Below, piece by piece: positions 6,456 through 26,506 of a stretch of 64,000 nt of DNA. The DNA lies in IMG/VR virus record IMGVR_UViG_3300025121_000282, positions 186,001-250,000 of that record. The stretch is one strand, 5' to 3'. The translations under genes and the position numbers were made by a program. Below the pieces are notes generated by a model. It did no database searches. It saw only the letters and a program-made list of their open reading frames with translations, and was not told where the DNA came from. The stretch's first letter is position 1. Every line of letters begins with the position of its first letter.

Positions 6456-6466
6456 CCGCAGTCAAG

Positions 6467-7815: not shown

Positions 7816-7869
7816 CCTATTCGGTGCCTGTGTGAATGGACATGGTTGGCCACAAAGGAGCCCACTAAA

Positions 7870-8190: not shown

Positions 8191-8273
8191 CACCTTTTAG
8201 TCCTGACGGTTGACCGATCGTAGCCTCAGGTGAAGAATTATAGACACCAATCGACTGCAACAAGGAAAATTGA

Positions 8274-8615: not shown

Positions 8616-8669
8616 ACAATCTTACGAGACAATCAACCAATCAATTATTATAAAAGGACACCAATTATA

Positions 8670-9098: not shown

Positions 9099-9140
9099 CT
9101 AGTGCCATTGCCTGCTGAATGTACCCTAGGAGAATCAATC

Positions 9141-9347
9141 ATGAATAAATTTGTGGTCACCACCACACGCATCCCCACCAATTTCAACGCCCCGACGTGC
9201 AATGTTGTGGAAGCGGAAACTGAGCAGGGTGCACTGCTCATCATCAAGGACTACTACCGCGACTTCAGTCTCCCTCAGTACGTGTACTCAGTCTCCCCCT
9301 ATGTTCCGCCCCCTGCTGGACGTATCTTGAACAGAGAAGAACTGTGA
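9141..9347 (+). CDS. hypothetical protein
   Basis: TAGGAG RBS; motif at 9095. Confidence 0.75.
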   Translation: MNKFVVTTTRIPTNFNAPTCNVVEAETEQGALLIIKDYYRDFSLPQYVYSVSPYVPPPAGRILNREEL

Positions 9348-9403
9348 AGGATTGACCAGGGTACTAACAGACTGAAGAACAACAGACATTCAAGGAGCAA
9401 CTT

Positions 9404-9598
9404 TTGAACACTTCAGAACATGAACTTCGTGAACGCGTCTGTGGAATTCTCCAGTCCGGAGACTTGGCGCTCTACCAGATGAAGCGCCAATGGTTCAAGT
9501 CCAAGGCTGACGAAATTGCTATCCAGAGTCTGGAGGACCACCTTGCTTTGGTGCGTGCCTACCTCAAAAAGCGAGACGCCGAACTGAAGGGTGGCTGA
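9404..9598 (+). CDS. coiled-coil hypothetical protein
   Basis: AAGGAG RBS with TTG start; motif at 9352. Confidence 0.7.
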   Translation: MNTSEHELRERVCGILQSGDLALYQMKRQWFKSKADEIAIQSLEDHLALVRAYLKKRDAELKGG

Positions 9599-9599
9599 A

Positions 9600-9701
9600 A
9601 TGTGGGAACTTTTTGAAGTGACTGGATGGGTTGGGGTTTTCAGTCTGACTATGGTGGGCATCGACTGGATCGGTGTCAAACTCGGCCTCTGGGTCGATTG
9701 A
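9600..9701 (+). CDS. 33-aa hydrophobic peptide
   Basis: MWELFEVTGWVGVFSLTMVGIDWIGVKLGLWVD; stop inside TTGAC at 9698. Confidence 0.5.
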   Translation: MWELFEVTGWVGVFSLTMVGIDWIGVKLGLWVD

Positions 9702-9704
9702 CCG

Positions 9705-10019
9705 ATGCCTGACCTATATCTCACCCCGAGAAACATGGAAAGAATCGAGGCGGGCTGCAACATCCACGGTGGCTTTCATTTGAGCCCCGATTGCAGTGGG
9801 CTCTTACGCCATCATACTTGTCCCATTCCCAGACCAGTTGTGGTGTACAACTTGCAACCTGCCACTGCTACGGTGGCATACAAAGCCAAAATTACAATTG
9901 CTGGAATTGAAGTCGGGAACGTATGCTCCCTATGCTTCAATCAAGAAATGTCCAGACAAAATCAAGTAAAGATATCGGAAGCTCTAAAGGAGAACGAAGA
10001 TCATGGAAAATCAGTATGA
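9705..10019 (+). CDS. hypothetical protein (CSLC)
   Basis: 104 aa ORF overlapping the next start. Confidence 0.55.
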   Translation: MPDLYLTPRNMERIEAGCNIHGGFHLSPDCSGLLRHHTCPIPRPVVVYNLQPATATVAYKAKITIAGIEVGNVCSLCFNQEMSRQNQVKISEALKENEDHGKSV

Positions 10020-10296
10020 ACTGTTGACGAGAATTCTGCAGGATGCCGGAATTCCCACTGCCACCACACCTCCGAAGCTTCAGCCGTATGGAGATGCCGC
10101 CAAGTGCCCACGCCTCTGGTGGCCAAATACGGAGACACCCTACGTCCAGGTGTGCATGACCAACTCCACCCCCGGACACGAGCGCTATGAGGTCGTGGAC
10201 GACCGGCACAACGCCTTTGGCTACGAACCCCTGGTCGTGGGCGAGGATGTCACGGCCTCAGATGCCACAGCCCTAGTGAGAAACATCCTGGCTTAG
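10003..10296 (+). CDS. hypothetical protein
   Basis: AAGGAG upstream. Confidence 0.7.
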   Translation: MENQYELLTRILQDAGIPTATTPPKLQPYGDAAKCPRLWWPNTETPYVQVCMTNSTPGHERYEVVDDRHNAFGYEPLVVGEDVTASDATALVRNILA

Positions 10297-10319
10297 GCCA
10301 TTCCCAGTGCTGCAATAAG

Positions 10320-10868
10320 TTAAATGCTACTGTAAGCCCTTAACACTTCTGCAACGTCGTCATACACTTCTGGTTCAGTCGCAACAGTAGCGCAGCAATT
10401 CACCGACCTGACCACTCTGGGCTGGAAGATTTCTACCAGGGTCCTGGTCTGCTCGTTCACAGCGTCCCTCAAAGTCCTAAAAATTCCCACACCACCCTTG
10501 ATTTTGTAATCGGTCTGCTTGTCGTCCAACGCAAGCTTTGCGCCCGCCTTGGTTATAGCCTTGTCTATAATTTTCCAAATTGCAGTCCGAGTCAACTTAC
10601 CCCAATGAAGGATAGACTTGAAAAGTAGGGATTTGGCTTCCAACTTATTCTTGCGTCCGTATTCCAGAAGGCGAGTCTGTAGGCTGGCTTTGACTTTGTC
10701 TGGCATTTGACAATCTCGCACCAGAGCCTGAGCTTGCCCATAAGTCAAACCTGAAATTTGCTTATCTGAGGTAATTCTCAGGTTTGCGCATAGGATGAGC
10801 AGTAACTTATCACGGTTTGAGTGGGCAACTTCTATCATGGTTTTGAAAAGTTTGGCTACAGTGCTCAT
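10320..10868 (-). CDS. basic, AT-rich hypothetical protein (possible late/virion protein)
   Basis: AGGAG RBS; TGTATAAT upstream (10900-10907). Confidence 0.8.
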   Translation of the reverse strand: MSTVAKLFKTMIEVAHSNRDKLLLILCANLRITSDKQISGLTYGQAQALVRDCQMPDKVKASLQTRLLEYGRKNKLEAKSLLFKSILHWGKLTRTAIWKIIDKAITKAGAKLALDDKQTDYKIKGGVGIFRTLRDAVNEQTRTLVEIFQPRVVRSVNCCATVATEPEVYDDVAEVLRAYSSI

Positions 10869-10974
10869 TTTGCAACTCTCCTGTTTACTTCTTGCTACTA
10901 TTATACAATGAAAAGACTATTGACTCGAATTGTTTCCATACGAATAACCACACACACCAACAAGGAGATTAAAA

Positions 10975-11286
10975 ATGGACATCAGCGACACAGACAATAA
11001 CACCACCCTGGGAACGTCGTTGACTTTCCTCATTCTGGACTACCGCGGGAAATACGACTTTCCTGGCGACCAAAACGGGTTTGTGTTCGAACATCGGAGG
11101 TCCATACCCAAGACCACCAGTACCGAGGGCTATGCCATCCGGACAGATGACACTGGTGGGGGGTGGCGGGTGGACTACATCCCCCAATTCGGTCCCAAAG
11201 AGACTGTCTACGGACCCAACCGGGAAAGCTACTGGCCCACCAACGAGGAAGCGGCTGCAGCCCTGGAGTTGTACCTGAAAGATTGA
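10975..11286 (+). CDS. family C hypothetical, copy 2
   Basis: Paralog of 6141..6455; stop inside TTGAC at 11283. Confidence 0.85.
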   Translation: MDISDTDNNTTLGTSLTFLILDYRGKYDFPGDQNGFVFEHRRSIPKTTSTEGYAIRTDDTGGGWRVDYIPQFGPKETVYGPNRESYWPTNEEAAAALELYLKD

Positions 11287-11345
11287 CCGCAGTCTGTTTC
11301 CATGTGAATAGCCCCAGACACCAAGAACCACAAGGAGATTGAAGA

Positions 11346-11642
11346 ATGCGCTTCCTCAATGATAATGACCTCAGTGCTCTCGTCTGCCACATGAATCGTC
11401 AGATTGTGGGCTTGGCCTCAAGGTCGGTCAACGGGGAACGAGTCACGTTGATTGCCAAGCTCCACGTCGCCGTTCCCGATGATGACACGGTGGAGGACAC
11501 CGATGTGCCAGTGACCCCCTCGACAGAGCGAGGCACGATCACTTACCACACCCATCGCCACCTGGGCGGGGTCCTGCTGGAAGAGACGGACGGAACTCCG
11601 AGTCTCACACAGGCAATCCGGGAGTTCAATGAATGGATTTAG
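11346..11642 (+). CDS. hypothetical protein
   Basis: AAGGAG RBS; motif at 11283. Confidence 0.75.
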   Translation: MRFLNDNDLSALVCHMNRQIVGLASRSVNGERVTLIAKLHVAVPDDDTVEDTDVPVTPSTERGTITYHTHRHLGGVLLEETDGTPSLTQAIREFNEWI

Positions 11643-11696
11643 TTATTAACGTAGATCGTTTCCATGTGAAGCACCAACAAAGGAGACTGAAAGCCA

Positions 11697-11963
11697 ATGT
11701 CCAACCTCGAAGACGCCGATTTCACGCGGATCATCGAAGCGAGTCTCGCAGTGGAGAAAGCTGCGGACGAACTTCAGACCAAGCTCGCCTCTCTCCAGAA
11801 CAAGGTGGCACCATACCTACCCCCGAACAAGGGCTTGAGGGTTTGGATTGAAGCCATGAGAGCGGCGGCCTACTGTGACGGTCCTGGCGAGACTGGACAC
11901 GAAGACGGGAAGGTGTTTAGCTCTGCCCGCTTGGCCCGAGTCCTGCTGAGTGCCAGTGAATGA
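11697..11963 (+). CDS. hypothetical protein
   Basis: AAGGAG RBS; TTAAC motif at 11646. Confidence 0.75.
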   Translation: MSNLEDADFTRIIEASLAVEKAADELQTKLASLQNKVAPYLPPNKGLRVWIEAMRAAAYCDGPGETGHEDGKVFSSARLARVLLSASE

Positions 11964-12163
11964 GTGCCAAAAAGAAGTGCTCATATTGTAAGCGGAGGCC
12001 AGTCACGTACTGCTCTCCAGCGGATTTTTGTAATATCTGTTGGGACCGCTGGTTCAAATCAGGTTGTCCCAATTTTGATGGCAAGCGGTGGGTTTTGAAA
12101 ATCGTCCGCTTCGTCAACAGCACAAAGAACAAAACCCGCAACACTAGGAGCAGGCCACAGTGA
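11960..12163 (+). CDS. Zn-finger-like small protein (CxxC...CxxC)
   Basis: ATGA coupling; CSYC/CNIC. Confidence 0.65.
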   Translation: MSAKKKCSYCKRRPVTYCSPADFCNICWDRWFKSGCPNFDGKRWVLKIVRFVNSTKNKTRNTRSRPQ

Positions 12164-12375
12164 AATTGGACATGGTTAAGTACCTTTCGTTTGAGGCAGT
12201 GGTACCTGTCAAAATGGACTCTAGCCATCGTGACCCCGAATTGGACGAACCCAAGGCACGGACGCTTCTCGCTTCGTTGGGGGTCGCACCGCGAGACACC
12301 AATCGTGCTCTGAAAATCCTTAGGGTGCGGGTCGAACAGGTGGCCGCCCAAGTCTCGTATGAGGACCTGATCTAG
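12160..12375 (+). CDS. hypothetical protein
   Basis: GTGA coupling to the upstream gene. Confidence 0.6.
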   Translation: MKLDMVKYLSFEAVVPVKMDSSHRDPELDEPKARTLLASLGVAPRDTNRALKILRVRVEQVAAQVSYEDLI

Positions 12376-12440
12376 ATTGACCACAGTCTGTTTCCATGTG
12401 AAGCACTACGAGACACTAACTACAAGGGAGACTAACTACA

Positions 12441-12689
12441 ATGGCCGTTTACAATCGCACCAAGAAAGCTGACCGGGCACGGGAAATTGCTGATCGGCAG
12501 GCTGAGATTGAGGCCATTGAGGCCGGGCTTTGGCCTCGTGACATCAACGACCAGTTTCGGTGGTACGACCGGACTCCCACTTTTACCCCTGCTCAGTGGG
12601 CTCGGAAGATGTGTGAGGACACAATCGCCTACCTGACCGCAATTCCTGGTCGGATTGCAAATGGAGAACTGTCCGGATGGGAGGCGTAA
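12441..12689 (+). CDS. hypothetical protein
   Basis: GGGAG RBS; motif at 12377. Confidence 0.75.
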   Translation: MAVYNRTKKADRAREIADRQAEIEAIEAGLWPRDINDQFRWYDRTPTFTPAQWARKMCEDTIAYLTAIPGRIANGELSGWEA

Positions 12690-12690
12690 G

Positions 12691-12924
12691 ATGAAGGTCT
12701 CCGAACTCATCCAGTGGCTGGCCACTCAAGACCAGGAGGCCACTGTTGAGGTTGTCGTACATATGGATCGTGGTAGTTACTACGAACAGGGTGGCACGGC
12801 TACGACCGAGGAATTCACCGGCGAACTGTCCGAATACACCGATTTCCGAGAAAACCAATTTGTCACCCCAGACCAGCCTCATTTCAACCGGCGATTCCTG
12901 CTTCTGGGTGTGTACAAAGGTTAA
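12691..12924 (+). CDS. hypothetical protein (MKVSELIQWL)
   Basis: GGAGG RBS; stop TAA inside TTAAC at 12921. Confidence 0.75.
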   Translation: MKVSELIQWLATQDQEATVEVVVHMDRGSYYEQGGTATTEEFTGELSEYTDFRENQFVTPDQPHFNRRFLLLGVYKG

Positions 12925-12965
12925 CTACAATCTGTTTCCATTTGAAAAGAAGGGTGCAACTTACA

Positions 12966-13373
12966 ATGTCTACCGAAAAAGAAGCGACGACTACCCGCGC
13001 TGTTCTGAATCCGGCCACGACCAAGGACTGGCTCAAGTCTATGCTGACAAGCTCCCTTCGAAGGGTGACCCGGGTCGAAATTCACTACTTACCCCCAAGG
13101 TGGGCAGCTGTGGTCGAAATGGCATTCATGATGATGGAAGCCGTGTACTACCAACCGGGTGACGAACCCAAGGCGAGGGAAGCCGGTATCAAAATCATTG
13201 ATACGGCTGTGGAAGCCTTTAAGGGAGAATACACCGACAAGGCTGCGACTGCCCTAAACCAGATGGGTAGTATGCTGAGGTGTTGTAACGACTTGGACGA
13301 GCCAGCAGAGGTAAAGATGCTGGCTTACGTCAAGGAATTGATGGCCCGTCAGACCGAACCGGTCAAGAAATAA
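12966..13373 (+). CDS. helical hypothetical protein
   Basis: Motif at 12921; ATG 12966. Confidence 0.75.
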   Translation: MSTEKEATTTRAVLNPATTKDWLKSMLTSSLRRVTRVEIHYLPPRWAAVVEMAFMMMEAVYYQPGDEPKAREAGIKIIDTAVEAFKGEYTDKAATALNQMGSMLRCCNDLDEPAEVKMLAYVKELMARQTEPVKK

Positions 13374-13445
13374 CCAAAATCCTCGACTTAACCAATCCTC
13401 GCCTGGAATGAAGAACTGTACAGCAACAGGAAGGGACCGATTACA

Positions 13446-13724
13446 ATGGGAACTACCAGCGCGGGCCGCCATGCGTGGTACAGCCAGTCTCAAGCATGGG
13501 TGGCTGGTCATGTTACCTACCAGAGACCTGATGGGACGACCTATCAGGTGACTACAATCTCCAGCAGGCCCGAGCACGGGTGCGGTTGGGATGATATGAG
13601 GTACCTCGGTGTCATTGGTGAATCCGACATCTGCATCGGAAGCACCGAAGCACTTAACCCAAAACAAGCCAAGTTGGACAAAATCAATGATTTTGTCCGG
13701 TACAAAGAGTGGGAAATGGAATGA
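13446..13724 (+). CDS. family B hypothetical, copy 2
   Basis: Paralogy; TTAAC motif at 13388. Confidence 0.85.
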   Translation: MGTTSAGRHAWYSQSQAWVAGHVTYQRPDGTTYQVTTISSRPEHGCGWDDMRYLGVIGESDICIGSTEALNPKQAKLDKINDFVRYKEWEME

Positions 13725-13951
13725 AACAGTTTACTTTCTACTGGCTGGACGGCAAACGTGATGTCCTCTCGGGACGGGATGCGGCTGATGCCATGAACCG
13801 GGCGGGGTACGGTCATGGCGCCCTTGGTGCCCTGGACTTCCATGCCTGGGGGGACTGCAAGGAGTACGTCTGGAATCCCAAAACCCGGAGATGGGACAAT
13901 CCAGGGCTGAATGAGCGTCTCGACCGTGAGACGCTCATTCCCAAGGAGTAA
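13721..13951 (+). CDS. hypothetical protein (MKQFTFYWLDG)
   Basis: ATGA coupling. Confidence 0.7.
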   Translation: MKQFTFYWLDGKRDVLSGRDAADAMNRAGYGHGALGALDFHAWGDCKEYVWNPKTRRWDNPGLNERLDRETLIPKE

Positions 13952-13956
13952 AAGAC

Positions 13957-14199
13957 GTGAATTCACACTTCGAACAAGTCGTCTGGCACGCCCAAAACGC
14001 TGGTTTCCAGGTAGAGACGCTGGCGGGAGACAATTGCAGCTTCCGTGTCTACCCCGACGATGGGAGTCGGTGGGCCACCGTCACCGTGGGGCACTCAGGT
14101 TTGGTGAGGTGGAATACCCCGGGAGCAGAATTCAGACAGTTCGACTCCCCAAGCGTGGCTTTCAAAGAACTTAAGAAGGCATGGGGGACAAATCTGTAG
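13957..14199 (+). CDS. hypothetical protein
   Basis: AAGGAG RBS, GTG start. Confidence 0.7.
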   Translation: MNSHFEQVVWHAQNAGFQVETLAGDNCSFRVYPDDGSRWATVTVGHSGLVRWNTPGAEFRQFDSPSVAFKELKKAWGTNL

Positions 14200-14334
14200 C
14201 TATACTGGTGCAGCCCCCACCGGTAGTGGAACATGCATCTACATGGTTTGCTCCCGCCTGAGAGAGTGATTGACCCGATCTTTTCCCGTGCGAATACCTA
14301 TACCAATCAACCAATTATAATAAGGACACCATCA

Positions 14335-14751
14335 ATGTTTGACCCGCTCACCCATTACATGCAAACCATCCTGACACTCCTGGCAATGGACAATGACTCC
14401 CTGCGCGGTGCAGTTCAGGAGGCCCTCAAGCAGGACTCACTGGAGCCCATCAAGGGCGCCTTGAGTCCTCGCGATCTGGCCTACAATTTCTACCACAAGG
14501 AATGGGAAATTTGGGTTCAGATGGAGCTGTATCAGAGTTCCATGGAGCGGCGTCGAAACTGGGACGCTCTCAGCCGGGTAGAGGTTATGGTTTTTGGGCG
14601 GGCCACCCAAGGTCGAATCATCGAGACACTGGATGATGGTTTCTCCGTAGAGTTCGAAGATGAGATGGAAATCCCCATCGGGGAAATGTGGCCTTCTCAC
14701 CACGGATGCATGGGTGGTCTCTTCAAACGGGAAGACGTCACTTTCCTCTGA
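14335..14751 (+). CDS. hypothetical protein (C-terminal SH3-like barrel possible)
   Basis: Motif at 14270; leader resembles that of the 8670 gene. Confidence 0.75.
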   Translation: MFDPLTHYMQTILTLLAMDNDSLRGAVQEALKQDSLEPIKGALSPRDLAYNFYHKEWEIWVQMELYQSSMERRRNWDALSRVEVMVFGRATQGRIIETLDDGFSVEFEDEMEIPIGEMWPSHHGCMGGLFKREDVTFL

Positions 14752-14805
14752 CCGATTGACCGCTTTCGTTTCCATGTGAAGAATCCCAGAAGGAGAGAAT
14801 TCAAA

Positions 14806-14913
14806 ATGCGCACGCTCGAATCACTCGCAGATGGCCGTCTTATCACTTTTCTCGGTGCCGTTTCGGTGGACTTTCGCCACGTTCTGACCTGCCCAACGGG
14901 TTCGAGAATCTGA
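14806..14913 (+). CDS. 35-aa micro-ORF
   Basis: AAGGAG RBS after motif at 14756. Confidence 0.45.
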   Translation: MRTLESLADGRLITFLGAVSVDFRHVLTCPTGSRI

Positions 14914-14923
14914 AATTCTGTCC

Positions 14924-15109
14924 GTGGGATGGTGGAACTATCAGCACAAAAACGAGCCTCCATTTCTCATCCTGTCTCGGAGAGACAAGGGGATTTACAT
15001 CATCCCCGAATCCGAAGCTGGCGAATTGTTTGATGCCGGGTGGGTTCCCCCGAAGGTGACCAAACGGCTGGTGAATGGTGTCTTCGTGGCGGACGAGGAG
15101 AAAGTTTAG
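14924..15109 (+). CDS. hypothetical protein
   Basis: 61 aa ORF filling the gap; start uncertain. Confidence 0.5.
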   Translation: MGWWNYQHKNEPPFLILSRRDKGIYIIPESEAGELFDAGWVPPKVTKRLVNGVFVADEEKV

Positions 15110-15114
15110 CTACA

Positions 15115-15540
15115 ATGAGTACTCTTAATCAGAAGTACAGCGACACAGATGGTGTGGGCCTCGGCCGGTGCGAAGAGTGTGGCTACATGTTCGTGAATGA
15201 GAACGAGCGCCACACCAAAACCGGTCTGCCCGGCTTCTCCTGTGAACTTCACAAAGCCGTGCATATCGATGACTGGATCGAACTGCCTCCTGCCAACGAC
15301 CAGGAAAAACTGGTCAAGGAGTGGTTCGACCACTTCCGACGTCCCGCCATTCAGAAAGATTACAAGTGGCTCGCGGCCCGCAAGGTTTTCTGCATTTTCG
15401 AGGGAAAGAGGATGCGTTGCACCGGGGCTTCAAGGATGGGTGACGTGTGGCTGACCTACAATCTTGTCAAGGACTTCGGATACGACCGGCGGGTGGACGT
15501 GGCGGGATGCTCTGATTGGACCGTCGAGGGCCCGAAGTGA
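15115..15540 (+). CDS. hypothetical protein (CEECG)
   Basis: GAGGAG RBS, ATG 15115. Confidence 0.75.
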   Translation: MSTLNQKYSDTDGVGLGRCEECGYMFVNENERHTKTGLPGFSCELHKAVHIDDWIELPPANDQEKLVKEWFDHFRRPAIQKDYKWLAARKVFCIFEGKRMRCTGASRMGDVWLTYNLVKDFGYDRRVDVAGCSDWTVEGPK

Positions 15541-15818
15541 AAGTTGCAATCTACAAGTCCCAGGGTGTGGTCCCGTTCCAGACTCGTGAATGGGACGTGT
15601 CGGAGGCATACGCCACCAACGAAGAGGCCATCCGAGTTTGCAATGCCATGAATTGGAAAATGGTGAGCGCAAACTGCAATCCGGGTGTCTTCACGGTTGA
15701 CGTGTCCGAGTCCCAGATGAACCTGTGGAAGCTCCACAAGCAAATGGACATCTGCGAGATTCCTACACTTGTCATGTTGTCTGATGGTATCCAATACCAT
15801 GTTGACCCATTGGGGTGA
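15537..15818 (+). CDS. hypothetical protein
   Basis: GTGA coupling. Confidence 0.7.
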   Translation: MKVAIYKSQGVVPFQTREWDVSEAYATNEEAIRVCNAMNWKMVSANCNPGVFTVDVSESQMNLWKLHKQMDICEIPTLVMLSDGIQYHVDPLG

Positions 15819-15820
15819 CA

Positions 15821-16081
15821 ATGCAAATTAACGGCATCGACGTGTTGGTCGGGACCCAGGTGCAGTCGCTGGTCTTCGACTACGAAACCAGTGTGGCTCG
15901 TGGCGGGATTTGTCGTGGCGACATTGGCAATGTTGTACGCGTGGAACCCGAACGCGTTGAAGTTGTGTTCTACCCGTGGGGCGTCCCAACAATGTCCTGG
16001 TGGACAAAGAGCGAAACTGCACACCTGACCACACTCGTCCATATGCAGACAGTTTTGTGGCTCACCCTTGGTAGGAGATAA
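15821..16081 (+). CDS. hypothetical protein
   Basis: Coupled to upstream stop. Confidence 0.6.
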   Translation: MQINGIDVLVGTQVQSLVFDYETSVARGGICRGDIGNVVRVEPERVEVVFYPWGVPTMSWWTKSETAHLTTLVHMQTVLWLTLGRR

Positions 16082-16244
16082 TCAGGTCCAACCCACGATG
16101 GAAACAGAATGTGGAATCGATGATTTCTGGACGCTGGGTGTGTGGGTGAAATCGGAAACACGGGCTGACGTTACCCCCACACAATTGACCACCCTACTCT
16201 ACGGGCGAATTACATCCTAGACCCCAACAAGAAGATAAGAACAA

Positions 16245-16568
16245 ATGAGCAAGCAATTCAGCAGTGGTATGCACGCGTGGTTCAGCTGGAAACAGGCCGA
16301 AGCTGCTGGCGTTCGGACGCTGAAGCGTCCTGATGGGACAACCTACCATCTGACCACAGTGACTGCCGCACTCGAACACGGCTGTGGTTGGGATGACATG
16401 CAATATCTCGGGACCATTGGTGAAGATGACACCGACGTGTGCTCTACCATGTCCTCACGAGAAAACTGCAACCATGTGAAAAACACGACACTTCTCCCGT
16501 TGGATGTGGGTTCCAAAGAGTTCTTTAAACTGGTTCTGGACTGCGAGTCCAACCAGAAAAACAAGTAA
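16245..16568 (+). CDS. family B hypothetical, copy 3
   Basis: Paralogy; motif at 16185. Confidence 0.85.
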   Translation: MSKQFSSGMHAWFSWKQAEAAGVRTLKRPDGTTYHLTTVTAALEHGCGWDDMQYLGTIGEDDTDVCSTMSSRENCNHVKNTTLLPLDVGSKEFFKLVLDCESNQKNK

Positions 16569-16623
16569 CATGACTGACTTGTCTCGGTGTCCACATGGAT
16601 AGTCAACAGAGGTAGTGCAACAG

Positions 16624-16935
16624 ATGGCCGACCTTCGACGTGAATTTACCACTGACCAGTACGAAGCCATGCGCCCAGATTTGGAAGAAGCAAGGGCTGC
16701 AGTTCTGGCTGCGCTTGCCCGACACCATGAACTGGGTCTGACCCAATGGGTCCGTCAAGATGCTGACTCTGTACCTGACCCTGCGGTAAAAGAGGCATTC
16801 AGCCTGTTGAATCAAGCGGCCAGACTCATCGACCGGGCTCAGTTCGAACTAGTGCTGCGCCTCCATACAACCGGAGCCATTGCACCCAAAAATGGCCCGA
16901 CAAGAGAGGCAACAAATGGCAACCATTCCCCGTGA
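16624..16935 (+). CDS. family D helical protein, copy 1
   Basis: Tandem paralog of 16916..17203 (LARHHELG...DPAVKEAF). Confidence 0.8.
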   Translation: MADLRREFTTDQYEAMRPDLEEARAAVLAALARHHELGLTQWVRQDADSVPDPAVKEAFSLLNQAARLIDRAQFELVLRLHTTGAIAPKNGPTREATNGNHSP

Positions 16936-17203
16936 TTTCACCATTGCACAATACGACGCCATGGCCCCCGACTTCGAGGCCGCTCGTGCAGGCGTTCTCG
17001 CCCTATTGGCTCGCCACCATGAACTTGGTCAGAGTCATTGGTTGGGCGGTGATAGTGACTCTGCACCCAACCCCGCGGTCAAAGAAGCATTTGACCTGTT
17101 GCATCAAGCGGTAAGGCTCATGGACCGTGCTCAGCACGAACTGGTCATGCACCTCTGCGCAAACGGGCACATTCCTTTTCAAACCGATCAGAAACCGGAT
17201 TGA
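16916..17203 (+). CDS. family D helical protein, copy 2
   Basis: Tandem paralog; stop inside TTGAC at 17200. Confidence 0.8.
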   Translation: MATIPRDFTIAQYDAMAPDFEAARAGVLALLARHHELGQSHWLGGDSDSAPNPAVKEAFDLLHQAVRLMDRAQHELVMHLCANGHIPFQTDQKPD

Positions 17204-17461
17204 CCGCGGACTGTTTCCGCTCTCTTCAAGGAGCGAGACGACCCAGGATAGTCTTGCATGGGTGACGAAAAACTACCATGCTTAGCTGGAGAAGTAGTGC
17301 ACATCCAGTGAAATGTCGGCACTAGTTGTGGGTTCGGGTGACGCCGATAAGGGGCTGCAGACCCCAAGCGCAAACCCTCCAAATGTGGTATCACTTGGCG
17401 TAAAAAGCCAAGCAATTACGGACAAAGCCACACAAGGCCTGTTGATGGTCCTAGACAGGCT

Positions 17462-17503
17462 ACAGCGCCCTCCCGGCCTCGCAAGTGGTTGAGAGGGCGC
17501 TGT
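17462..17503. terminator. 11-bp hairpin ACAGCGCCCTC/GAGGGCGCTGT, possible terminator
   Basis: Inverted repeat seen directly; weak U-tract. Confidence 0.4.
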
Positions 17504-17616
17504 CGTATTTGAAATCTATGAACAAATAAATTAACCAATCCTTTCGTGGGGTGAAGAACTGTACACAGTGGGCTCGGTGCCACACCCGAACCTTCTTTCC
17601 ACGACTGATGCACCTA

Positions 17617-17667
17617 CCCCCCCCCCCCCCCCCCCCCGCAATAATGGCTGCGGGCGAGGATAGATGT
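17617..17667. repeat. C21 tract plus hairpin element copy 2
   Basis: C21 at 17617-17637, then GCAATAATGGCTGCGGGCGAGGATAGATGT. Confidence 0.85.
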
Positions 17668-18504
17668 ACCCGAATTCGCCCGTTGCGGTCCGCCTGTCAC
17701 CAGTACGTGGCATAGCTGCCCCCTCCCATCTGTACTCCCACGTGAATGCGGCTCGCACTCGCAACCGCCTATCAAACCCACACACCACTCAATTGCGCGC
17801 CCGCATCAAGTACCCACAATTTCGCAAACAGCATACACGAACACGGATGTACACGGAATCGTGTATGCTGTGCTTTCGTGTATGCCAGAACGGATGTACT
17901 GCATCACGCTCTCGCCAACACATGCAAGTGCTCACGTGAACGTACGGGCTGTCACATGTGGGCCCACACACGAGTGTGCTCAGTGTTCAAGAAAATTTGT
18001 CCACAATATCTCGTTCTGATTTCTGAAATTTGTCCGCACTGTTCCCACTCTCCCAAGACAACCACCCCAGCTTTGGAAGCCCCTCAGTTTAGAACTATTC
18101 ACCCCCTGACACCCCTCGAACCAAAGCTATTTACACGTCCACACCTAGAAACTTTCAACTTCTGGTGTGTTTATTTATACCTATGGTTCTAAAAAGCGGT
18201 CTATTATAACAAGGTGTCACCCTTTGGCCAAACCAGAGCCACAGGTTTGGGCCTGCCTTGGGTTTGGGGCTTGGGGGGGGGGAGTTGTTTTTCACCCAGT
18301 AGGGAGTGCTAGATAACCCGTATTTCGGGAGTCTCAAACCGTTGACTACCCATTGACGGAGCCCTGTAGGGGTGAAATAACTCAGAGACGGAGATTTTCT
18401 TTCCCGCCTCGAAGAGACTCCCCCCCCCCGACTAAGGATTGACGAGGCGGGATGGGGAGTGAAGAATCCCAGAGACAATCAACCGACTGAACAGGAGATT
18501 CCCA

Positions 18505-18975
18505 ATGACCACCAAGTCCACCAAGTCCACCACCAAGTCCCCCCGCGCTCCCAAGATCGTCGTCGAGAAGCTGGACGCCCTGGGCTTCCCGATTCCCGCC
18601 GCTGCGCAGGAGCCGGTCATCGTCCCGGTCGAAGAGACCAATCCGGGCGCGACCGGGGTCGCGCCCGTCGTCGTCGTCAAGGCGGTCCGAGTCGTCCCCG
18701 AGGCCCCGCTCTGCCTCTGCGGGTGCCTGACCCAGACCAGCCACCACACCCGGACCTTCCGCCAGGGCCACGACGCCCGGCTGGTGGGGATGTTCCGCAA
18801 GGCGCCCGAGGGCCTCTCGGAGGCGCAGGTCGCGGCGGCCACCCAGATCATCAACCGGAAGCTCCAGAGCGCCGCCGCGAAGCTCCCGGCCGCCTCCAAG
18901 CCCATCCTGGAGGCCGCTCCTGCAGAGCAGAACGAGACCACCAGCGACGAGGCCGCTGCTTCCAACGTGGGCTGA
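18505..18975 (+). CDS. family A (CLCGC...GHDAR) protein, copy 2
   Basis: Paralogy; motif at 18439; AGGAG RBS. Confidence 0.88.
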   Translation: MTTKSTKSTTKSPRAPKIVVEKLDALGFPIPAAAQEPVIVPVEETNPGATGVAPVVVVKAVRVVPEAPLCLCGCLTQTSHHTRTFRQGHDARLVGMFRKAPEGLSEAQVAAATQIINRKLQSAAAKLPAASKPILEAAPAEQNETTSDEAAASNVG

Positions 18976-18982
18976 TCGGCCT

Positions 18983-19007
18983 TTCGCCTCCCGGACGGAG
19001 CGGTCAA
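18983..19007 (-). promoter_or_regulatory. antisense promoter motif TTGAC-N15-GCGAA pointing into 18505..18975
   Basis: Exact motif on the - strand just after the stop codon. Confidence 0.65.
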
Positions 19008-19066
19008 TCTTTGGGTGTCCGAGCCCGGGATTGACCGCCCAAGGACCGAGGTGAATCATCCCGAGA

Positions 19067-19231
19067 TTGGCTGTTCAGAAATCGGTTCGAAACATTGAGG
19101 ATTGGCAACCACCCGGTACGTTCCGGGAAAGGGGTCAATCTTTAGGAGGTGGTTTGTCAGGACCACCAACCCAGCACATAGGCTGACACCTTTTGTGATT
19201 GGGTGCTTCGGACCGGTTTCTGAACAGCCAA
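19067..19231 (+). ncRNA. candidate structured ncRNA 1 (25-bp closing helix, multibranch core)
   Basis: 19067-19091 pairs with 19207-19231, its only non-Watson-Crick pairs being two G-U; own motif at 19031; no ORF. Confidence 0.7.
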
Positions 19232-19269
19232 ATGAGGATTGACCGCTCTGGTCTCCGAGGCGAAGAGTT

Positions 19270-19340
19270 ATGTGGGGGTACCAATCGGCCCTAGAGGCCG
19301 GGGTCCACTGATACGTAATTCAGTATTGGTACCCCCACAT
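19270..19340 (+). ncRNA. candidate ncRNA 2 (three-way junction)
   Basis: Perfect 16-bp stem 19270-19285/19325-19340 enclosing CGGCC/GGCCG and ACTGA/TCAGT hairpins; motif at 19239. Confidence 0.65.
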
Positions 19341-19378
19341 TGTCAATTGACGAGAGTCACCCTCAGGTGAAGTGTCCT

Positions 19379-19553
19379 GGAAGAGAGGACAATCCAAGCC
19401 CCCGAGCCGTGTGGCCCGCCCGACTCCGCGGTAAGGCCTGCCACCCGCTTTGGGACTCAAGGGGCCTCTCTTCCCTTTTCAACTACACCCTCATTGGTCC
19501 TTTTCAAGAGACTGGTGGGGGCGCAGTCGTATTTGGGGTTCGAAAAGGACCAA
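19379..19553 (+). ncRNA. candidate ncRNA 3 (two stem domains)
   Basis: 10-bp stem 19379-19388/19465-19474 and 12-bp stem 19494-19505/19542-19553; motif at 19347. Confidence 0.6.
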
Positions 19554-19609
19554 AACCTGGATTGACCGATTTTGTTTCCATGCGAAGAAAGACAAGGAGG
19601 AACTCAAAA

Positions 19610-19843
19610 ATGTCCAGATTCAAACCCTCGGTTTCGCAGCTGATGGAGGTCCAGCACCGGGTGGACACTCAGAATCCGTCGCAAGTGGCACTCTTCTGCC
19701 GGGTGATTGGTGCCTCGATGCTTGCCAATGCTGCTGCCTCGATTCCCTCCGTCTGGAGAGCGGCTCGGGCCCAGTTGGCCATTGAGGCCGCCACGCTCAA
19801 TGTGGTCTTGGGCATCGACCTCGAAGTGGTTTGGTGCGATTGA
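19610..19843 (+). CDS. hypothetical protein
   Basis: AAGGAGG RBS; stop inside TTGAC at 19840. Confidence 0.8.
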   Translation: MSRFKPSVSQLMEVQHRVDTQNPSQVALFCRVIGASMLANAAASIPSVWRAARAQLAIEAATLNVVLGIDLEVVWCD

Positions 19844-19900
19844 CTGATTTCGTTTCCATGTGAAGAACGACACACAATCGACAGGGAGGGGCTAAAAAAG

Positions 19901-20173
19901 ATGGCACGCTTCTACGTTCAGGCGAGTGAGTACGAGTTGATTGCGTCCCTGGACGTGGTTGTGGCCGACACCTACGAGGCCATCCAACACTTTAACCGGC
20001 ACTTCAAGGGACGGGTTGGCGGGTGGAAAGACGTGAAGAGTTCCACCCACATCGTGATCAACCTTGACAACCCCAAAGAGCACTGGTTGGGAACCGACTC
20101 CTTCAAGCGCATCTGCACCGGGTGGCGCGAAGGTCGAGAATACTGGTCGGGTCCACACTCAATCGAGTATTAA
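19901..20173 (+). CDS. hypothetical protein
   Basis: GGGAGG RBS; stop inside TTAAC at 20170. Confidence 0.8.
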   Translation: MARFYVQASEYELIASLDVVVADTYEAIQHFNRHFKGRVGGWKDVKSSTHIVINLDNPKEHWLGTDSFKRICTGWREGREYWSGPHSIEY

Positions 20174-20236
20174 CCGGTTCCATCTTCAGCTGAAAGAGAC
20201 TACGAGACACCGAACCAACTGAAAGGGGGATTCCAA

Positions 20237-20689
20237 ATGCTCAGCGAAGACCGACTCGAAGTTCTCGACCTCTACGGCTTCGGATGGAATCGCTTCTTTC
20301 AGACGGTCCACGAGCCGGACCCGGAAGTGAAGCGGTCCATGATCGGCGATGTGCTTCTCATGTGGGAGTTCGACAAGACAGGAGCCGAGTACCACTGGTA
20401 CGACCTGTTCACACGCCTCCGCCGAGACGAGCATGCGATCATCCTGGAGCAGCTGTTGGTCTTCATCGACCAGGGGTTCGTCCTCGGACCGTTCGCAGAC
20501 GACACCATCACCATCAACCCGGAAAAGCAGGAAGAACTGATGCTTTTCGTGGGTATGTGGCCGGAGGGTTTCGAGGCACCCGAGGGTGTGGAAGTTCTTC
20601 GCCTGACGGAAGAGGCCAAGGACATTCTCGAAACAGAGGGCGGAGAAGAGTACCTCATCGAGCAGGCGGTCAAAGCACTCAAGGATTGA
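20237..20689 (+). CDS. acidic hypothetical protein
   Basis: Stop inside TTGAC at 20686. Confidence 0.8.
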   Translation: MLSEDRLEVLDLYGFGWNRFFQTVHEPDPEVKRSMIGDVLLMWEFDKTGAEYHWYDLFTRLRRDEHAIILEQLLVFIDQGFVLGPFADDTITINPEKQEELMLFVGMWPEGFEAPEGVEVLRLTEEAKDILETEGGEEYLIEQAVKALKD

Positions 20690-22323: not shown

Positions 22324-22373
22324 CCCACGCCGTTTCCATGTGAACAGTCACGCACTGGAAAAGGAGACCGAAA

Positions 22374-22514
22374 ATGGTAAAGAATCTCATCATCGGTCTC
22401 CTGCTCGTTGCCTTCGTGGCACGGGCAAACCCAGAAAAGGTGGCTCATCTGAGCAAGATGGCCACGACTGGAGTCACCTACCTGGAGAAACAGGTCGGGT
22501 TCAAATTCTGGTGA
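22374..22514 (+). CDS. 46-aa membrane-anchored/secreted peptide
   Basis: AAGGAG RBS; MVKNLIIGLLLVAFVARA hydrophobic N-terminus. Confidence 0.65.
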   Translation: MVKNLIIGLLLVAFVARANPEKVAHLSKMATTGVTYLEKQVGFKFW

Positions 22515-22562
22515 ATTGACCGCACCACAATTCGGACGAAGAGTGTTGTAGGAGACACCCCC

Positions 22563-22868
22563 ATGTACAAGAGTTTGGCAGAGTTTCTAGCCTCAACGAA
22601 TTTGCTGGAGAGGTTGACCAACATCGACAGGGCCCTGAATGTAAACGGGGCCCTGTGCAACCACCATGACGGTGTGGTCTTCAAAATCAACTTCGGCCCC
22701 TATACGGCGAGTTGCATGTGGCTGGATACCGTGTCGGACAACACCTGGAATGTCCAACTCTCCTACCTGGATTCAGACCACAAATACCACCCGTTCGGTG
22801 GCAGCGTTTCAACCTCTGAGTTCAAGATCGTAAAGGGTGTAGCCGAGATCTGCGGACTCGGCAATTGA
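22563..22868 (+). CDS. hypothetical protein
   Basis: AGGAG RBS; stop inside TTGAC at 22865. Confidence 0.8.
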   Translation: MYKSLAEFLASTNLLERLTNIDRALNVNGALCNHHDGVVFKINFGPYTASCMWLDTVSDNTWNVQLSYLDSDHKYHPFGGSVSTSEFKIVKGVAEICGLGN

Positions 22869-23245
22869 CGGGGTCTTCTCCGGGTGAAGAGTCCCCGAGG
22901 CGCTTTTGCCTCCCTTGTCCTCTGGGGGTTTTAACCATGCCTTCTTCCGATCTCTCCTTTTCCTTTTCCGGCCGTCCCTACCGCGCCCGCCTTCTCTCCG
23001 AGCCCGGCAAGGGTGACGCGCTGGTCTTCGGTCTCAGCCTCAACCCGAAACTGGACAAGGTCTGGGTTCTGGTGCAACGTGACGGCGCGTGGGTGCGCCC
23101 CACGGGTGAAAAGCCCTCGGCTCTGGGGCGGGCCGCAGTCGCAGCGATCGGTTGATCGGCGTTTCCGATTGACGGGGTCTTCTCCGGGTGAAGAGTCCCC
23201 GAGGCGCTTTTGCCTCCCTTGTCCTCTGGGGGTTTTAACCATGCC
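22864..23245 (+). repeat. 78-bp exact direct repeat (22864-22941, 23168-23245) comprising promoter, leader and ATG
   Basis: Read directly base for base. Confidence 0.95.
22937..23155 (+). CDS. hypothetical protein (MPSSDLSF)
   Basis: ATG inside repeat copy 1. Confidence 0.7.
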   Translation: MPSSDLSFSFSGRPYRARLLSEPGKGDALVFGLSLNPKLDKVWVLVQRDGAWVRPTGEKPSALGRAAVAAIG

Positions 23246-23820: not shown

Positions 23821-23865
23821 ATCGATTCAGCGGGATTGACCGCAGTTTTTTCGTGTGAATTACAA

Positions 23866-24050
23866 TGTACCGGGGCGACCTCCGAAGGGCCACTTAGCTC
23901 TTAAACATGTGCCTACGCCCCAAAGTGCTATGCGGTAGGGTGCATGCAATAGTCGTCAATGGTGTCTGGCGTAAGTGTGCTGCGGGGTCGGGTCAATGTT
24001 CGACCGTAAGACCGTCTGAAGCACACAGACACCGTTCCTTTTAAAGCTGG
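23866..24050 (+). ncRNA. candidate structured ncRNA 4
   Basis: Motif at 23836 followed by no ORF; nested stems 23961-67/24027-33, 23975-81/24020-26, 23986-90/24001-05 and 23906-16/23935-46. Confidence 0.55.
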
Positions 24051-24051
24051 A

Positions 24052-24090
24052 CCCCCCCCCTGCAATAATGGCTGCGGGCGGGGATAGATG
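24052..24090. repeat. C9 tract plus hairpin element copy 3
   Basis: GCAATAATGGCTGCGGGCGGGATAGATGT at 24062-24090. Confidence 0.85.
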
Positions 24091-24318
24091 TGTCAAACGT
24101 GTGGACACCTGCTACGCCTGTCAACGCGTCCACGCTGCATCCGCACAACCCACTCAGACGTACCCCCACGGGAGACATTCGAGCCGCACAATCCATTGTA
24201 ACCCGTTTCCACATAATAGTAAGTTGTGGTGGGTGGCAGGTTGTCCGAGGCATTTGAAAACTCACTGTTGAATCTTCCACCTGAGATTGACCCGTTTCCA
24301 TCTCGGGTGAAAAACAAC

Positions 24319-25999: not shown

Positions 26000-26506
26000 A
26001 TGGCCACCAAGTCCACCAAGAGCACCACCAAGTCCCCCCGCGCCACCCGCAAGCAGGCCGAGGTCCTCGACGCCCTCGGTTTCCCGGTCCCCGCCATCAT
26101 GGAGGCCGCTCCCGAGCCCGTCGTGGCGCCCGAGCCCGAAATCCCGGTGGTCGTGGCCGTCAAGGCCGAAAAGGCGGTCCGAGTCGTCCCCGAGGCCCCG
26201 CTCTGCCTCTGCGGCTGCCTCGTGCAGACGAGCAGCCACCTGCGGACCTTCCGCCAGGGCCATGACGCCCGGCTGGTGGGCTTCCTGGCCGCCAACGAGC
26301 GGGCGGTCGCGAAGCAGAAGGAGGCCCCTCACAACCTCTCGGAGGCGCAGATCACCGCCGCCTGCCAGATCCGGAACCGCAAGGCGGAGGCCGCCGCCGC
26401 GAAGCTCCCTTCGACCTCGTCGAAGCCCGTGCTGGAGGCCGCTCCTGCGGAGCAGAACGAAGCCGAGCAGAGCACGGACGAGCAGGACGCCGCGAACGCC
26501 GGCTGA
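26000..26506 (+). CDS. family A (CLCGC...GHDAR) protein, copy 3
   Basis: Paralogy; motif at 25929; AAGGAG RBS. Confidence 0.88.
   Translation: MATKSTKSTTKSPRATRKQAEVLDALGFPVPAIMEAAPEPVVAPEPEIPVVVAVKAEKAVRVVPEAPLCLCGCLVQTSSHLRTFRQGHDARLVGFLAANERAVAKQKEAPHNLSEAQITAACQIRNRKAEAAAAKLPSTSSKPVLEAAPAEQNEAEQSTDEQDAANAG

What the first reader, a model, noticed from the sequence alone, without database searches (positions are those of the whole stretch)
19031..19560. Cluster of three consecutive promoter-driven structured RNA cassettes
Motifs at 19031, 19239 and 19347 each precede an ORF-free segment that folds end to end and stops just before the next TTGAC. RNA1 has a 25-bp helix, RNA2 a 16-bp helix with a three-way junction, and RNA3 has 10-bp and 12-bp helices. 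The deviations from perfect complementarity in RNA1 are G-U on the + strand, which points to selection on RNA rather than DNA. None matches tRNA, tmRNA, SRP, RNase P or hammerhead hallmarks that I can recognise. With 3440-3555 and 23866-24050 this gives at least five candidate novel phage ncRNAs.
Basis: partly seen in the sequence, partly recalled or inferred. Interest (0 to 1): 0.85.

Follow-up and report, generated by a model that had tools for sequence, protein, structure and literature searches.

The report
Phage early-region structured RNA gene cassettes
A 315-kb groundwater phage carries two small non-coding RNA cassettes, each behind its own early promoter, whose folds are kept by compensating mutations in the only known relative; a third cassette is a lineage-specific insert before a shared terminator, and none has a known function.

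Summary
The observation largely holds. The three TTGAC motifs are real copies of a phage promoter motif. That motif occurs about 55 times on the + strand of the first 28.6 kb, roughly once per gene, and it also drives a tRNA-Leu gene.

- **RNA1 (19066-19233)** is a four-way junction closed by a 25-bp helix (z -9.1). A ~80%-identical relative (L033) keeps the fold: 5 compensatory pairs, 10 compatible single changes, 2 breaks. In both lineages the + strand folds 12-19 kcal/mol better, with 8-9 G-U pairs.
- **RNA2 (19268-19343)** is a three-way junction. It has an ortholog and a diverged paralog in L033, again with compensatory changes.
- **RNA3** is composite. Its promoter and 5' domain (19347-19480) are missing from the relative and fold no better than chance. 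Its 3' hairpin plus GUCGUAUUUGG (19482-19536) is a conserved terminator-like end module.

There are no Rfam, tRNA or tmRNA matches, and no run holding the stretch as RNA was listed. Only two lineages exist, so the covariation evidence is thin.

These are most likely autonomous early ncRNA genes of new families. Their function is unknown; a protein-binding or scaffold role is my inference.

The parts
19031..19059 (+). Promoter of RNA1: -35 TTGACC (19031-19036), 17-nt spacer, -10-like AATCAT (19054-19059). The predicted start is near 19066, at the foot of helix P1.
   Evidence: Sigma-70-type scan hit, 9/12. The ortholog L033:1630-1658 is also a hit. -35, GAA and the spacing to P1 are conserved while the spacer diverges. 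The motif family is shown.
19066..19233 (+). RNA1, a four-way junction. P1 is 25 bp (19067-19091 with 19207-19231). Arm A is 19095-19145, arm B 19148-19167 and arm C 19169-19204. Loop B GUCAG (19156-19160) and loop C CUGAC (19183-19187) are complementary and conserved.
   Evidence: z -9.1; the ortholog has the same fold, z -8.0. 63 pairs: 98.4% of cells paired, 5 compensatory, 10 one-sided compatible, 2 broken; slid controls give 33-53%. The + strand is favoured in both lineages. Coordinates.
19239..19268 (+). Promoter of RNA2: TTGACC, 16 nt, GCGAA, with a -10-like AAGAGT. The predicted start is near 19275, inside the 16-bp helix.
   Evidence: Motif match; ortholog at L033:2452. Start position inferred by analogy with the tRNA-Leu cassette.
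19268..19343 (+). RNA2, a three-way junction. P1 is 19270-19285 with 19325-19340, P2 is 19286-19300 and P3 is 19307-19324.
   Evidence: z -5.65. A model built from the window sequence alone finds the L033 ortholog (38 bits, E 3e-7) and a paralog at L033:403-479 (21 bits, E 0.006). Pair table: ortholog has 3 compensatory pairs, 1 co-deleted pair and 1 break; paralog has 7 compensatory pairs and 3 breaks in outer P1.
19347..19480 (+). Promoter-like motif (19347-19375) plus RNA3a (19376-19480, with the 10-bp helix 19379-19388/19465-19474). This is a lineage-specific insertion of uncertain status.
   Evidence: Absent from L033, where RNA2 runs straight into the terminator hairpin. No homolog by blastn or tblastx. 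The whole RNA3 segment (19375-19560) has z -1.9, and RNA3a itself folds better on the - strand (-55.2 against -46.7).
19482..19536 (+). RNA3b, the 3'-end module: a GC-rich hairpin (core 19488-19499 with 19510-19521) followed by GUCGUAUUUGG (19526-19536). It is the likely terminator or processing site for the whole RNA cluster.
   Evidence: Four copies share the 11-mer behind different, compensating hairpins: window 17459-17512 and 19482-19536, L033 472-520 and 2569-2612. The L033:2569-2602 copy is the strongest terminator-like site on that contig. The + strand is favoured in all four.
19562..19843 (+). Next cassette: promoter (19562-19590), Shine-Dalgarno sequence, and a 77-aa gene (19610-19843). 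This marks the end of the non-coding cluster.
   Evidence: The gene has no homolog except itself. In L033 a 15-codon mini-ORF stands in its place.
18505..18975 (+). Upstream gene, a 156-aa protein of unknown function with a CLCGC...FRQGHDARLVG motif. It is one of three paralogs in the window.

Best explanation
**What the region is.** 19031-19560 is a short non-coding operon in the early region of an uncultivated 315-kb tailed phage. It has three copies of the phage's one-per-gene early promoter and a single terminator-like hairpin at its end.

**RNA1 and RNA2.** These are autonomous small RNA genes of two new families. RNA1 is a 168-nt four-way junction closed by a 25-bp helix. RNA2 is a three-way junction of about 70 nt. 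Each travels with its own promoter: in the only relative lineage they sit in different gene neighbourhoods yet keep promoter, spacing and fold.

**RNA3.** It is a lineage-specific cassette (RNA3a) inserted between RNA2 and the end module that RNA2 owns in the relative.

**How it probably works (inferred, not shown).**
- Host sigma-70-type RNA polymerase starts 7-8 nt after the -10-like element, as it must for the tRNA-Leu cassette. That puts the 5' end of RNA1 at the foot of its closing helix.
- RNA1 has no terminator. Transcripts therefore run on to the hairpin at 19482-19536, and discrete RNAs must be released by processing. The 25-bp helix is long enough to be an RNase III substrate.
- Helices, junction bases, an A-rich bulge and two complementary loops are conserved, while other loops vary and no long single-stranded seed exists. 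On that basis I think RNA1 acts through its shape, as a protein-binding decoy or scaffold, rather than as an antisense regulator.
For: **Promoters.**
- The motif is highly enriched and strand-biased.
- The same motif sits directly before tRNA-Leu in both lineages. The tRNA starts 8 nt after the -10-like element and is followed with no terminator by a Shine-Dalgarno sequence and an ORF.
- The RNA1 promoters pass a sigma-70 scan in both lineages.

**RNA1 structure.** z is -9.1 and -8.0. There are 5 compensatory and 10 compatible changes against 2 breaks, with 98% of cells paired against 33-53% when partners are slid.

**RNA1 strand.** The + strand is favoured by 12-19 kcal/mol, with 8-9 G-U pairs against 0-1 A-C.

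**RNA2 family.** The model search and pair table are.

**Autonomy.** In L033, RNA1 follows an 86-aa gene and is separated from RNA2 by two protein genes.

**Non-coding.** No genes are called, GC3 shows no periodicity, and the ortholog has frame-breaking indels.

**End module.**
Against: - No transcript evidence exists. No listed RNA run holds the stretch, and the DNA runs only show that it is invariant.
- Covariation rests on two lineages for RNA1 and three sequences for RNA2. With two rows the shuffle control is weak (13/500).
- Both breaks in RNA1 fall in the long closing helix.
- RNA2 shows no strand preference, and its paralog folds better on the - strand.
- The predicted start of RNA2 lies about 5 nt inside its 16-bp helix.
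- The -10-like elements of the RNA2 and RNA3 promoters are poor (AAGAGT, AAGTGT).
- The function and the processing route are pure inference.
Confidence: 0.62

Rival explanations
1. The structures are cis-acting processing, stabilising or insulating elements within overlapping early transcripts, like the RNase III sites between phage T7 early genes, rather than RNA genes with a function of their own.
For: No terminator follows RNA1 in either lineage, so read-through is expected. The 25-bp helix has the length of an RNase III substrate. Promoters stand every ~500 nt, so transcripts must overlap. The tRNA-Leu is likewise followed directly by an ORF.
Against: A cis element needs no promoter of its own, yet RNA1 and RNA2 keep one in both lineages with conserved spacing. 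The three-hairpin interior of RNA1 is conserved by compensatory change, which a mere cleavage stem would not need. Only this locus among ~55 cassettes has such elements.
Confidence: 0.17
2. They are DNA-level palindromes: protein-binding or recombination sites, or a miniature inverted-repeat mobile element that landed between promoters.
For: There are long terminal inverted repeats (28 nt at 89% and 16 nt at 100%). RNA2 and its paralog show no + strand preference. The cassettes lie in different contexts in the two lineages.
Against: RNA1 has 8-9 G-U pairs on + that become A-C mismatches on the - strand or in a cruciform, in both lineages. It is single-copy in the window and in the related loci searched: no other copy was found by the covariance model or by blastn, and pattern scans of the viral and genome collections found only this contig. 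No target-site duplication is visible in the flanks.
Confidence: 0.08
3. Part of the cluster, above all RNA3a (19347-19480), is a decaying or recently inserted cassette with no function: a remnant left by recombination between the repeated promoters.
For: It is absent from the relative and has no homolog. Its fold is no better than chance and is better on the - strand. The frame of the downstream gene is open back to 19340. Recombination between repeated promoter and leader copies is seen in this population.
Against: It keeps a well-spaced promoter motif. It is 100% invariant in all sampled strains, though so is everything around it.
Confidence: 0.55
4. The RNAs are diverged members of a known family, such as a tRNA-like RNA, Y RNA, 6S RNA, riboswitch, self-cleaving ribozyme or retron ncRNA.
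For: RNA1 has a cloverleaf-like topology with paired ends. The - strand of RNA1 carries GGUCCGAAG, which I recall from vertebrate Y RNAs (from memory; a lead only).
Against: Nothing in Rfam 15 reaches the gathering score in the window. The only matches at E up to 10 are weak chance-level ones (E 2.3-4.6, far below gathering, none to these families), on both strands; the ortholog has none at E up to 1. ARAGORN finds nothing here. The five long - strand ORFs of 18.4-27 kb have no Pfam match at all; nor do the small + strand genes beside the RNAs, so no reverse transcriptase. The Y-like 9-mer is on the disfavoured strand and is changed in L033.
Confidence: 0.05

Closest known systems
Phage-encoded stable RNA genes in early or tRNA regions (T4 tRNA cluster with its species C and D RNAs; own knowledge), and this phage's own tRNA-Leu cassette
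   Same: A small structured RNA is placed directly behind an early promoter, lacks its own terminator, is co-transcribed with what follows and presumably needs processing. Here the parallel is direct: the same promoter motif and the same 7-8 nt distance from the -10-like element to the start of the structure.
   Different: RNA1 and RNA2 are not tRNAs and match no described family. The closing helix of RNA1 is 25 bp, not 7.
RNase III processing stems of phage T7 early mRNA and of rRNA operons (own knowledge)
   Same: A long double-stranded stem formed by the sequences flanking a structured domain, lying between transcription units that have no terminator between them.
   Different: T7 sites are simple hairpins with an internal loop and have no promoter of their own. 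Here the stem encloses a conserved three-hairpin domain. Cleavage is untested.
phi29 pRNA and other architectural or protein-binding phage and viral RNAs (own knowledge)
   Same: About 120-170 nt with paired 5' and 3' ends, a multi-helix junction and two loops with complementary sequences. The RNA acts through its shape, and its helices are conserved while sequence drifts.
   Different: There is no sequence or model similarity (Rfam search negative). pRNA belongs to small podoviruses that use a different packaging motor. Loop-loop pairing in RNA1 is only a conserved 5-nt complementarity, about 1-3% likely by chance.
Small RNAs predicted in virulent phages by transcriptomics (PMC8244752 and the works it cites) and candidate structured RNAs mined from IMG/VR (PMC10690425)
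   Same: Orphan non-coding RNAs of lytic phages with unknown function, recognised by structure and covariation.
   Different: The IMG/VR screen needed non-identical homologous intergenic regions within IMG/VR. This locus has only one contig there. I could not check their candidate list because no supplement is held.

Membership tests
Any Rfam 15 family (tRNA, tmRNA, 6S, SRP, RNase P, Y RNA, riboswitches, self-cleaving ribozymes and others) | Covariance-model score at or above the family's gathering score | tested here: not met
   0 matches in the whole window. At E up to 10 in 18900-19700 only chance-level miRNA/sRNA hits appear. 0 matches at E up to 1 in L033:300-2750.
tRNA / tmRNA | Cloverleaf with anticodon arm, or tmRNA tag and tRNA-like domain, recognised by ARAGORN | tested here: not met
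   The only gene found is tRNA-Leu at 5298-5385. None in L033.
Sigma-70-type promoter | TTGACA-like -35, 16-18 nt spacer, TATAAT-like -10 with A2 and T6 | tested here: inconclusive
   The RNA1 promoter passes in both lineages (TTGACC-17-AATCAT; TTGACC-17-AACAAT). The RNA2 and RNA3 promoters have poor -10 elements (AAGAGT, AAGTGT) and are not listed. All three fit the phage-specific motif. Activity is not testable here.
Intrinsic (Rho-independent) terminator, for 19482-19536 | GC-rich hairpin followed at once by a U-rich tract | tested here: inconclusive
   The ortholog L033:2569-2602 plus UCGUAUUUGG is the strongest terminator-like site on that contig (15 pairs). The window copy has an interrupted stem and is not listed. 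The tail has only 5 U in 8.
Bacterial / metazoan Y RNA | Conserved Ro-binding helix; a gene for a Ro/Rsr (TROVE) protein nearby | tested here: not met
   No Y RNA model match on either strand. The five long - strand ORFs of 18.4-27 kb and the 18 + strand proteins scanned carry no TROVE domain. The rest of the 315-kb genome was not scanned. The recalled 9-mer lies on the - strand and is altered in L033.
Retron ncRNA (msr-msd) | Flanking inverted repeats plus an adjacent reverse transcriptase gene | tested here: not met
   Flanking repeats are present. The neighbouring genes encode 71-156 aa proteins with no Pfam family in either lineage.
MITE-like mobile element | Terminal inverted repeats, many dispersed copies, target-site duplication | tested here: not met
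   Repeats are present. The element is single-copy in the window and related loci. No duplication is seen at the ends.
Base-pairing sRNA (Hfq-type) | Conserved single-stranded seed plus terminator hairpin with a U tail | tested here: not met
   The conserved unpaired stretches of RNA1 are 2-6 nt long and it has no terminator. RNA2 loops differ among the three family members.
RNase III substrate (functional analogy only) | Continuous double helix of about 20 bp or more; cleavage by the enzyme | not testable with these tools
   The helix length is met: 25 bp, or 23 of 25 in L033. Cleavage cannot be tested.

The most novel reading that the evidence does not exclude
RNA1 is a compactly folded RNA with a four-way junction, an A-rich bulge and a conserved GUCAG/CUGAC loop-loop contact, either within one molecule or between molecules. 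It is made in the first minutes of infection to bind and neutralise or redirect a host protein such as a nuclease, an RNA-sensing defence protein or RNA polymerase. That would make it a new class of phage early decoy or scaffold RNA. RNA2-type three-way junctions would be a second class that has multiplied within this phage lineage.
Probability: 0.15. Interest if true: 0.75.

Novelty: new member of a known kind. Interest (0 to 1): 0.5.

Why it matters
Non-coding RNAs of lytic phages, and of huge phages in particular, are almost unexplored. The few transcriptome studies report a handful of candidates with no function (PMC8244752). This locus offers two structure-supported RNA genes with defined promoters, a predicted 5' end and a shared 3' module. 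That makes them easy to synthesise and test.

They also lie in an unusual 28-kb region where nearly every small gene has its own near-identical promoter and cassettes are visibly gained, lost and shuffled. If RNA1 proves to be a decoy or scaffold for a host factor, it would add an RNA-based tool to the early takeover repertoire of phages.

The limits are clear. Only two lineages are known, the host is unknown, and there is no expression data.

Tried and rejected
**Searches for more relatives.**
- blastn of 18400-20400 against 50,697 phage records found no match.
- Protein-anchored scans of IMG/VR and JGI metagenomes with the flanking genes and with the paralog alignment returned only this phage or near-identical strains.
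- The 77-aa and 90-aa neighbour proteins have no useful homologs.
- Promoter-core pattern in IMG/VR: one unrelated contig.
- RNA1 conserved-block pattern in viral and genome collections: only itself.
- End-module pattern in 185,579 genomes: 22 hits, all chance matches without the hairpin.
- Four samples of the relative carry identical RNA1.

**Population variation.** Four DNA runs show no differences in 19047-19643. L003 looked like a 66%-diverged relative with a 100%-identical RNA region, but it is a chimeric join of paralog 3 to this locus.

**Expression.** The listed RNA runs hold none of the sampled words.

**Paralogs.** The RNA1 model finds none. The RNA2 model finds none in the window.

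**Ideas rejected.**
- Y RNA idea, as set out in the rivals and membership test.
- Coding potential of RNA3.
- Function of the upstream protein family: unknown.

**Technical.** A full z-score scan of the window timed out. I replaced it with a GC-corrected MFE scan whose 160-nt window truncates RNA1.

Full report
**Source and setting.** The window is positions 180001-244000 of IMGVR_UViG_3300025121_000282, a 314,886-bp viral contig from groundwater. It encodes a chaperonin, an adenylosuccinate lyase-like protein, an M16 peptidase and a baseplate-like protein.

The first ~28.6 kb differ from the rest. GC is 52-59% there against 42-48% elsewhere, genes are very small, and a promoter-like motif is repeated. 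The motif is ggaTTGAC-N15/16-G[TC]GAA(gaat). A loose form of it matches 62 times on the + strand of the window and 6 times on the - strand. About 55 of the + strand matches lie in 1-28.6 kb, most of them followed within 20-40 nt by a Shine-Dalgarno sequence and a start codon. A relative contig has the same one-promoter-per-gene layout.

- RNA1 (19066-19233) folds into a four-way junction: a 25-bp closing helix and three arms. MFE is -96.7 kcal/mol for the 179-nt stretch 19060-19238, z -9.1.
- RNA2 (19268-19343) is a three-way junction with a perfect 16-bp closing helix, z -5.65.
- The two closing helices are the longest local inverted repeats in the first 28.5 kb.
- RNA3 (19376-19560) is much weaker, z -1.9. 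Its 10-bp helix is in the MFE; the 12-bp helix is only an alternative pairing.

Each structure ends 6-7 nt before the next TTGAC. JGI and ENA gene calls on near-identical contigs leave the 634-nt gap without a gene. The strong GC3 bias of the neighbouring genes (0.72-0.92 in frame) is absent from the gap.

**Strand.** In RNA1 all nine imperfect pairs are G-U on the + strand. The + strand folds at -93.8 kcal/mol against -74.9 for the - strand. The ortholog repeats this: -95.0 against -82.8, with 8 G-U pairs. RNA2 has no G-U pairs and no strand preference. RNA3a folds better on the - strand.

**Known families.** Rfam 15 gives nothing at gathering score in the window. At E up to 10 on both strands of the locus there are only chance-level hits, and the ortholog gives nothing at E up to 1. 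ARAGORN finds only tRNA-Leu(CAG) at 5298-5385.

**Relatives.** Most searches returned only near-identical strains, in which the locus is 100% invariant. One apparent diverged relative (L003) is a chimeric join between paralogous genes.

The 150-aa protein three genes downstream led to a true relative. It is a 5.8-kb Logan contig (L033) at about 77-81% nucleotide identity, seen in four samples. This relative is the basis of the comparative evidence.

**RNA1 in the relative.** L033:1630-1838 carries the promoter and an RNA that folds on its own into the same four-way junction (-95.4 kcal/mol, z -8.0).

On the two-sequence alignment, of 63 pairs:
- 5 changed on both sides and stayed paired (three in arm A, one in arm B, one in arm C);
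- 10 changed on one side compatibly;
- 2 broke, both in the long closing helix.

98.4% of cells are paired, against 33-53% when partners are slid by 1-3 columns. With only two rows the shuffle control is weak (13/500).

Several features are conserved: junction bases (ACA, GA, UGC), an A-rich bulge in arm A, and the loops GUCAG (arm B) and CUGAC (arm C). The two loops are mutually complementary. By my estimate the chance of such a 5-nt match among three small loops is about 1-3%. It is a lead for a loop-loop contact, not a finding.

**RNA2 in the relative.** A covariance model built from the window sequence alone finds two matches in L033:
- the ortholog at L033:2481-2555 (38 bits, E 3e-7);
- a diverged paralog at L033:403-479 (21 bits, E 0.006).

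The ortholog shows 3 compensatory pairs, one pair deleted on both sides and one break. The paralog shows 7 compensatory pairs, and 3 breaks confined to the outer part of P1. Loop sequences differ among the three.

**RNA3 resolved.** In L033 the RNA2 ortholog is followed, without a promoter, by a 15-bp GC-rich hairpin and GUCGUAUUUGG. The paralog has the same arrangement.

The window has the same hairpin-plus-11-mer at 19482-19536. Its 3' arm is conserved and its 5' arm is different but still pairing. A fourth copy ends another non-coding stretch at 17459-17512. The L033 copy is the strongest terminator-like site on its contig.

So the 3' part of 'RNA3' is a shared end module. The promoter at 19347 and the 105-nt RNA3a are an insertion peculiar to the window lineage, with no homolog anywhere.

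**Promoter-to-RNA geometry.** The tRNA-Leu gene is a built-in control. In both lineages it lies directly behind the same motif. The tRNA starts 8 nt after the -10-like AAGAAT (AAGAAC in the relative) and is followed, with no terminator, by a Shine-Dalgarno sequence and an ORF.

- RNA1's closing helix begins 7 nt after its -10-like element in both lineages.
- For RNA2 the same rule puts the start about 5 nt inside the 16-bp helix, leaving an 11-bp P1. This matches the 9 bp that are actually maintained in the ortholog and the paralog.

These start sites are inferred.

**Autonomy.** In the window RNA1, RNA2 and RNA3a are adjacent, behind the CLCGC...FRQGHDARLVG gene. In L033 that gene is followed by the RNA2-like paralog. 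RNA1 lies 1.2 kb further on, behind an 86-aa gene, and two protein genes separate it from RNA2. Each RNA keeps its own promoter. This fits stand-alone genes better than leaders of particular mRNAs.

**Interpretation.**
- Shown: the structures are real and far better than chance for RNA1 and RNA2. They are kept by compensatory change in a second lineage. RNA1 is selected on the + strand. The promoters belong to a large, strand-biased family that also drives a tRNA. No described RNA family matches.
- Inferred: transcription from these promoters; read-through of RNA1 into the following cassettes; release by processing, for which the 25-bp helix suits RNase III (own knowledge); termination or cleavage at the end module; and a shape-based, protein-binding role.
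- Not obtainable here: expression data and more lineages.

**Verdict.** RNA1 and RNA2 are credible new phage ncRNA genes. RNA3 is a lineage-specific insert plus a shared terminator-like hairpin. The finding is interesting but not extraordinary, and its function is open.

Noticed in passing
window 1-28600: There are about 55 + strand copies of one promoter motif (ggaTTGAC-N15/16-GYGAA), roughly one per small gene (one per ~520 bp), against 6 on the - strand of the whole window. GC drops from 52-59% to 42-48% at about 28 kb. The relative contigs share this layout.
   Followed up: partly
window 5261-5416; L006:6475-6632: tRNA-Leu(CAG) lies directly behind such a promoter. It starts 8 nt after the -10-like element, encodes its CCA end, and runs with no terminator into a Shine-Dalgarno sequence and ORF. 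The arrangement is conserved in the relative.
   Followed up: yes
window 2927-3409, 18505-18975, 26000-26506: Three paralogs of a 156-168 aa protein share an invariant APLCLCGC...FRQGHDARLVG core (phrog_5395/5390, function unknown, no Pfam family). Paralogs 2 and 3 are preceded by tandem promoters with a C-run. Each is followed by a promoter-like motif on the - strand pointing back into the gene (19007 and 26538).
   Followed up: partly
It holds a tandem CCUCCCUGUUCA repeat (anti-Shine-Dalgarno-like) and ends with GUUGUAUCUGG, a variant of the end motif. It is absent from the relative (L006/L007), where the gene is followed at once by the next cassette.
   Followed up: partly
   Followed up: partly
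window 17199-17745, 24040-24091 and 2150-2174: A ~300-nt stretch with no called gene (17199-17512) ends in the same hairpin plus GUCGUAUUUGA module. The next cassette (17531-17745) and 23836-24225 share a 40-nt element, GCAATAATGGCTGCGGGCG(A/G)GGATAGATGT, preceded by a run of 10-20 C. Part of the element recurs at 2150-2174 and in L006/L007.
   Followed up: no
window 22865-23245; L003; run X7: Two cassettes begin with a 78-nt identical promoter and leader (22865 and 23169). One run carries a contig that skips the 304 nt between them. Another sample's contig (L003) joins paralog 3 to 18976. Repeated promoters therefore seem to mediate cassette loss or rearrangement, or else they break assemblies.
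   Followed up: partly
window 22361-22520: This is the most stable 160-nt window on the + strand after GC correction. A 15-nt inverted repeat (22362-22376 with 22388-22402) pairs a Shine-Dalgarno and start region with the sequence just downstream.
   Followed up: no
window 19610-19843; L033:2635-2745: The 77-aa gene after the RNA cluster has no homolog besides itself. In the relative, a 15-codon mini-ORF behind the same kind of promoter stands in its place. The relative also has a 263-aa gene that the window lacks.
   Followed up: no
window 19095-19106 / 19134-19145 and 19001-19016: The outer stem of RNA1 arm A looks like an inverted pair of promoter -35 regions (GAGGATTGGC and its partner GGTCAATCTTT, which recurs at 19003). 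This resemblance is lost in the relative, where the stem has covaried.
   Followed up: no
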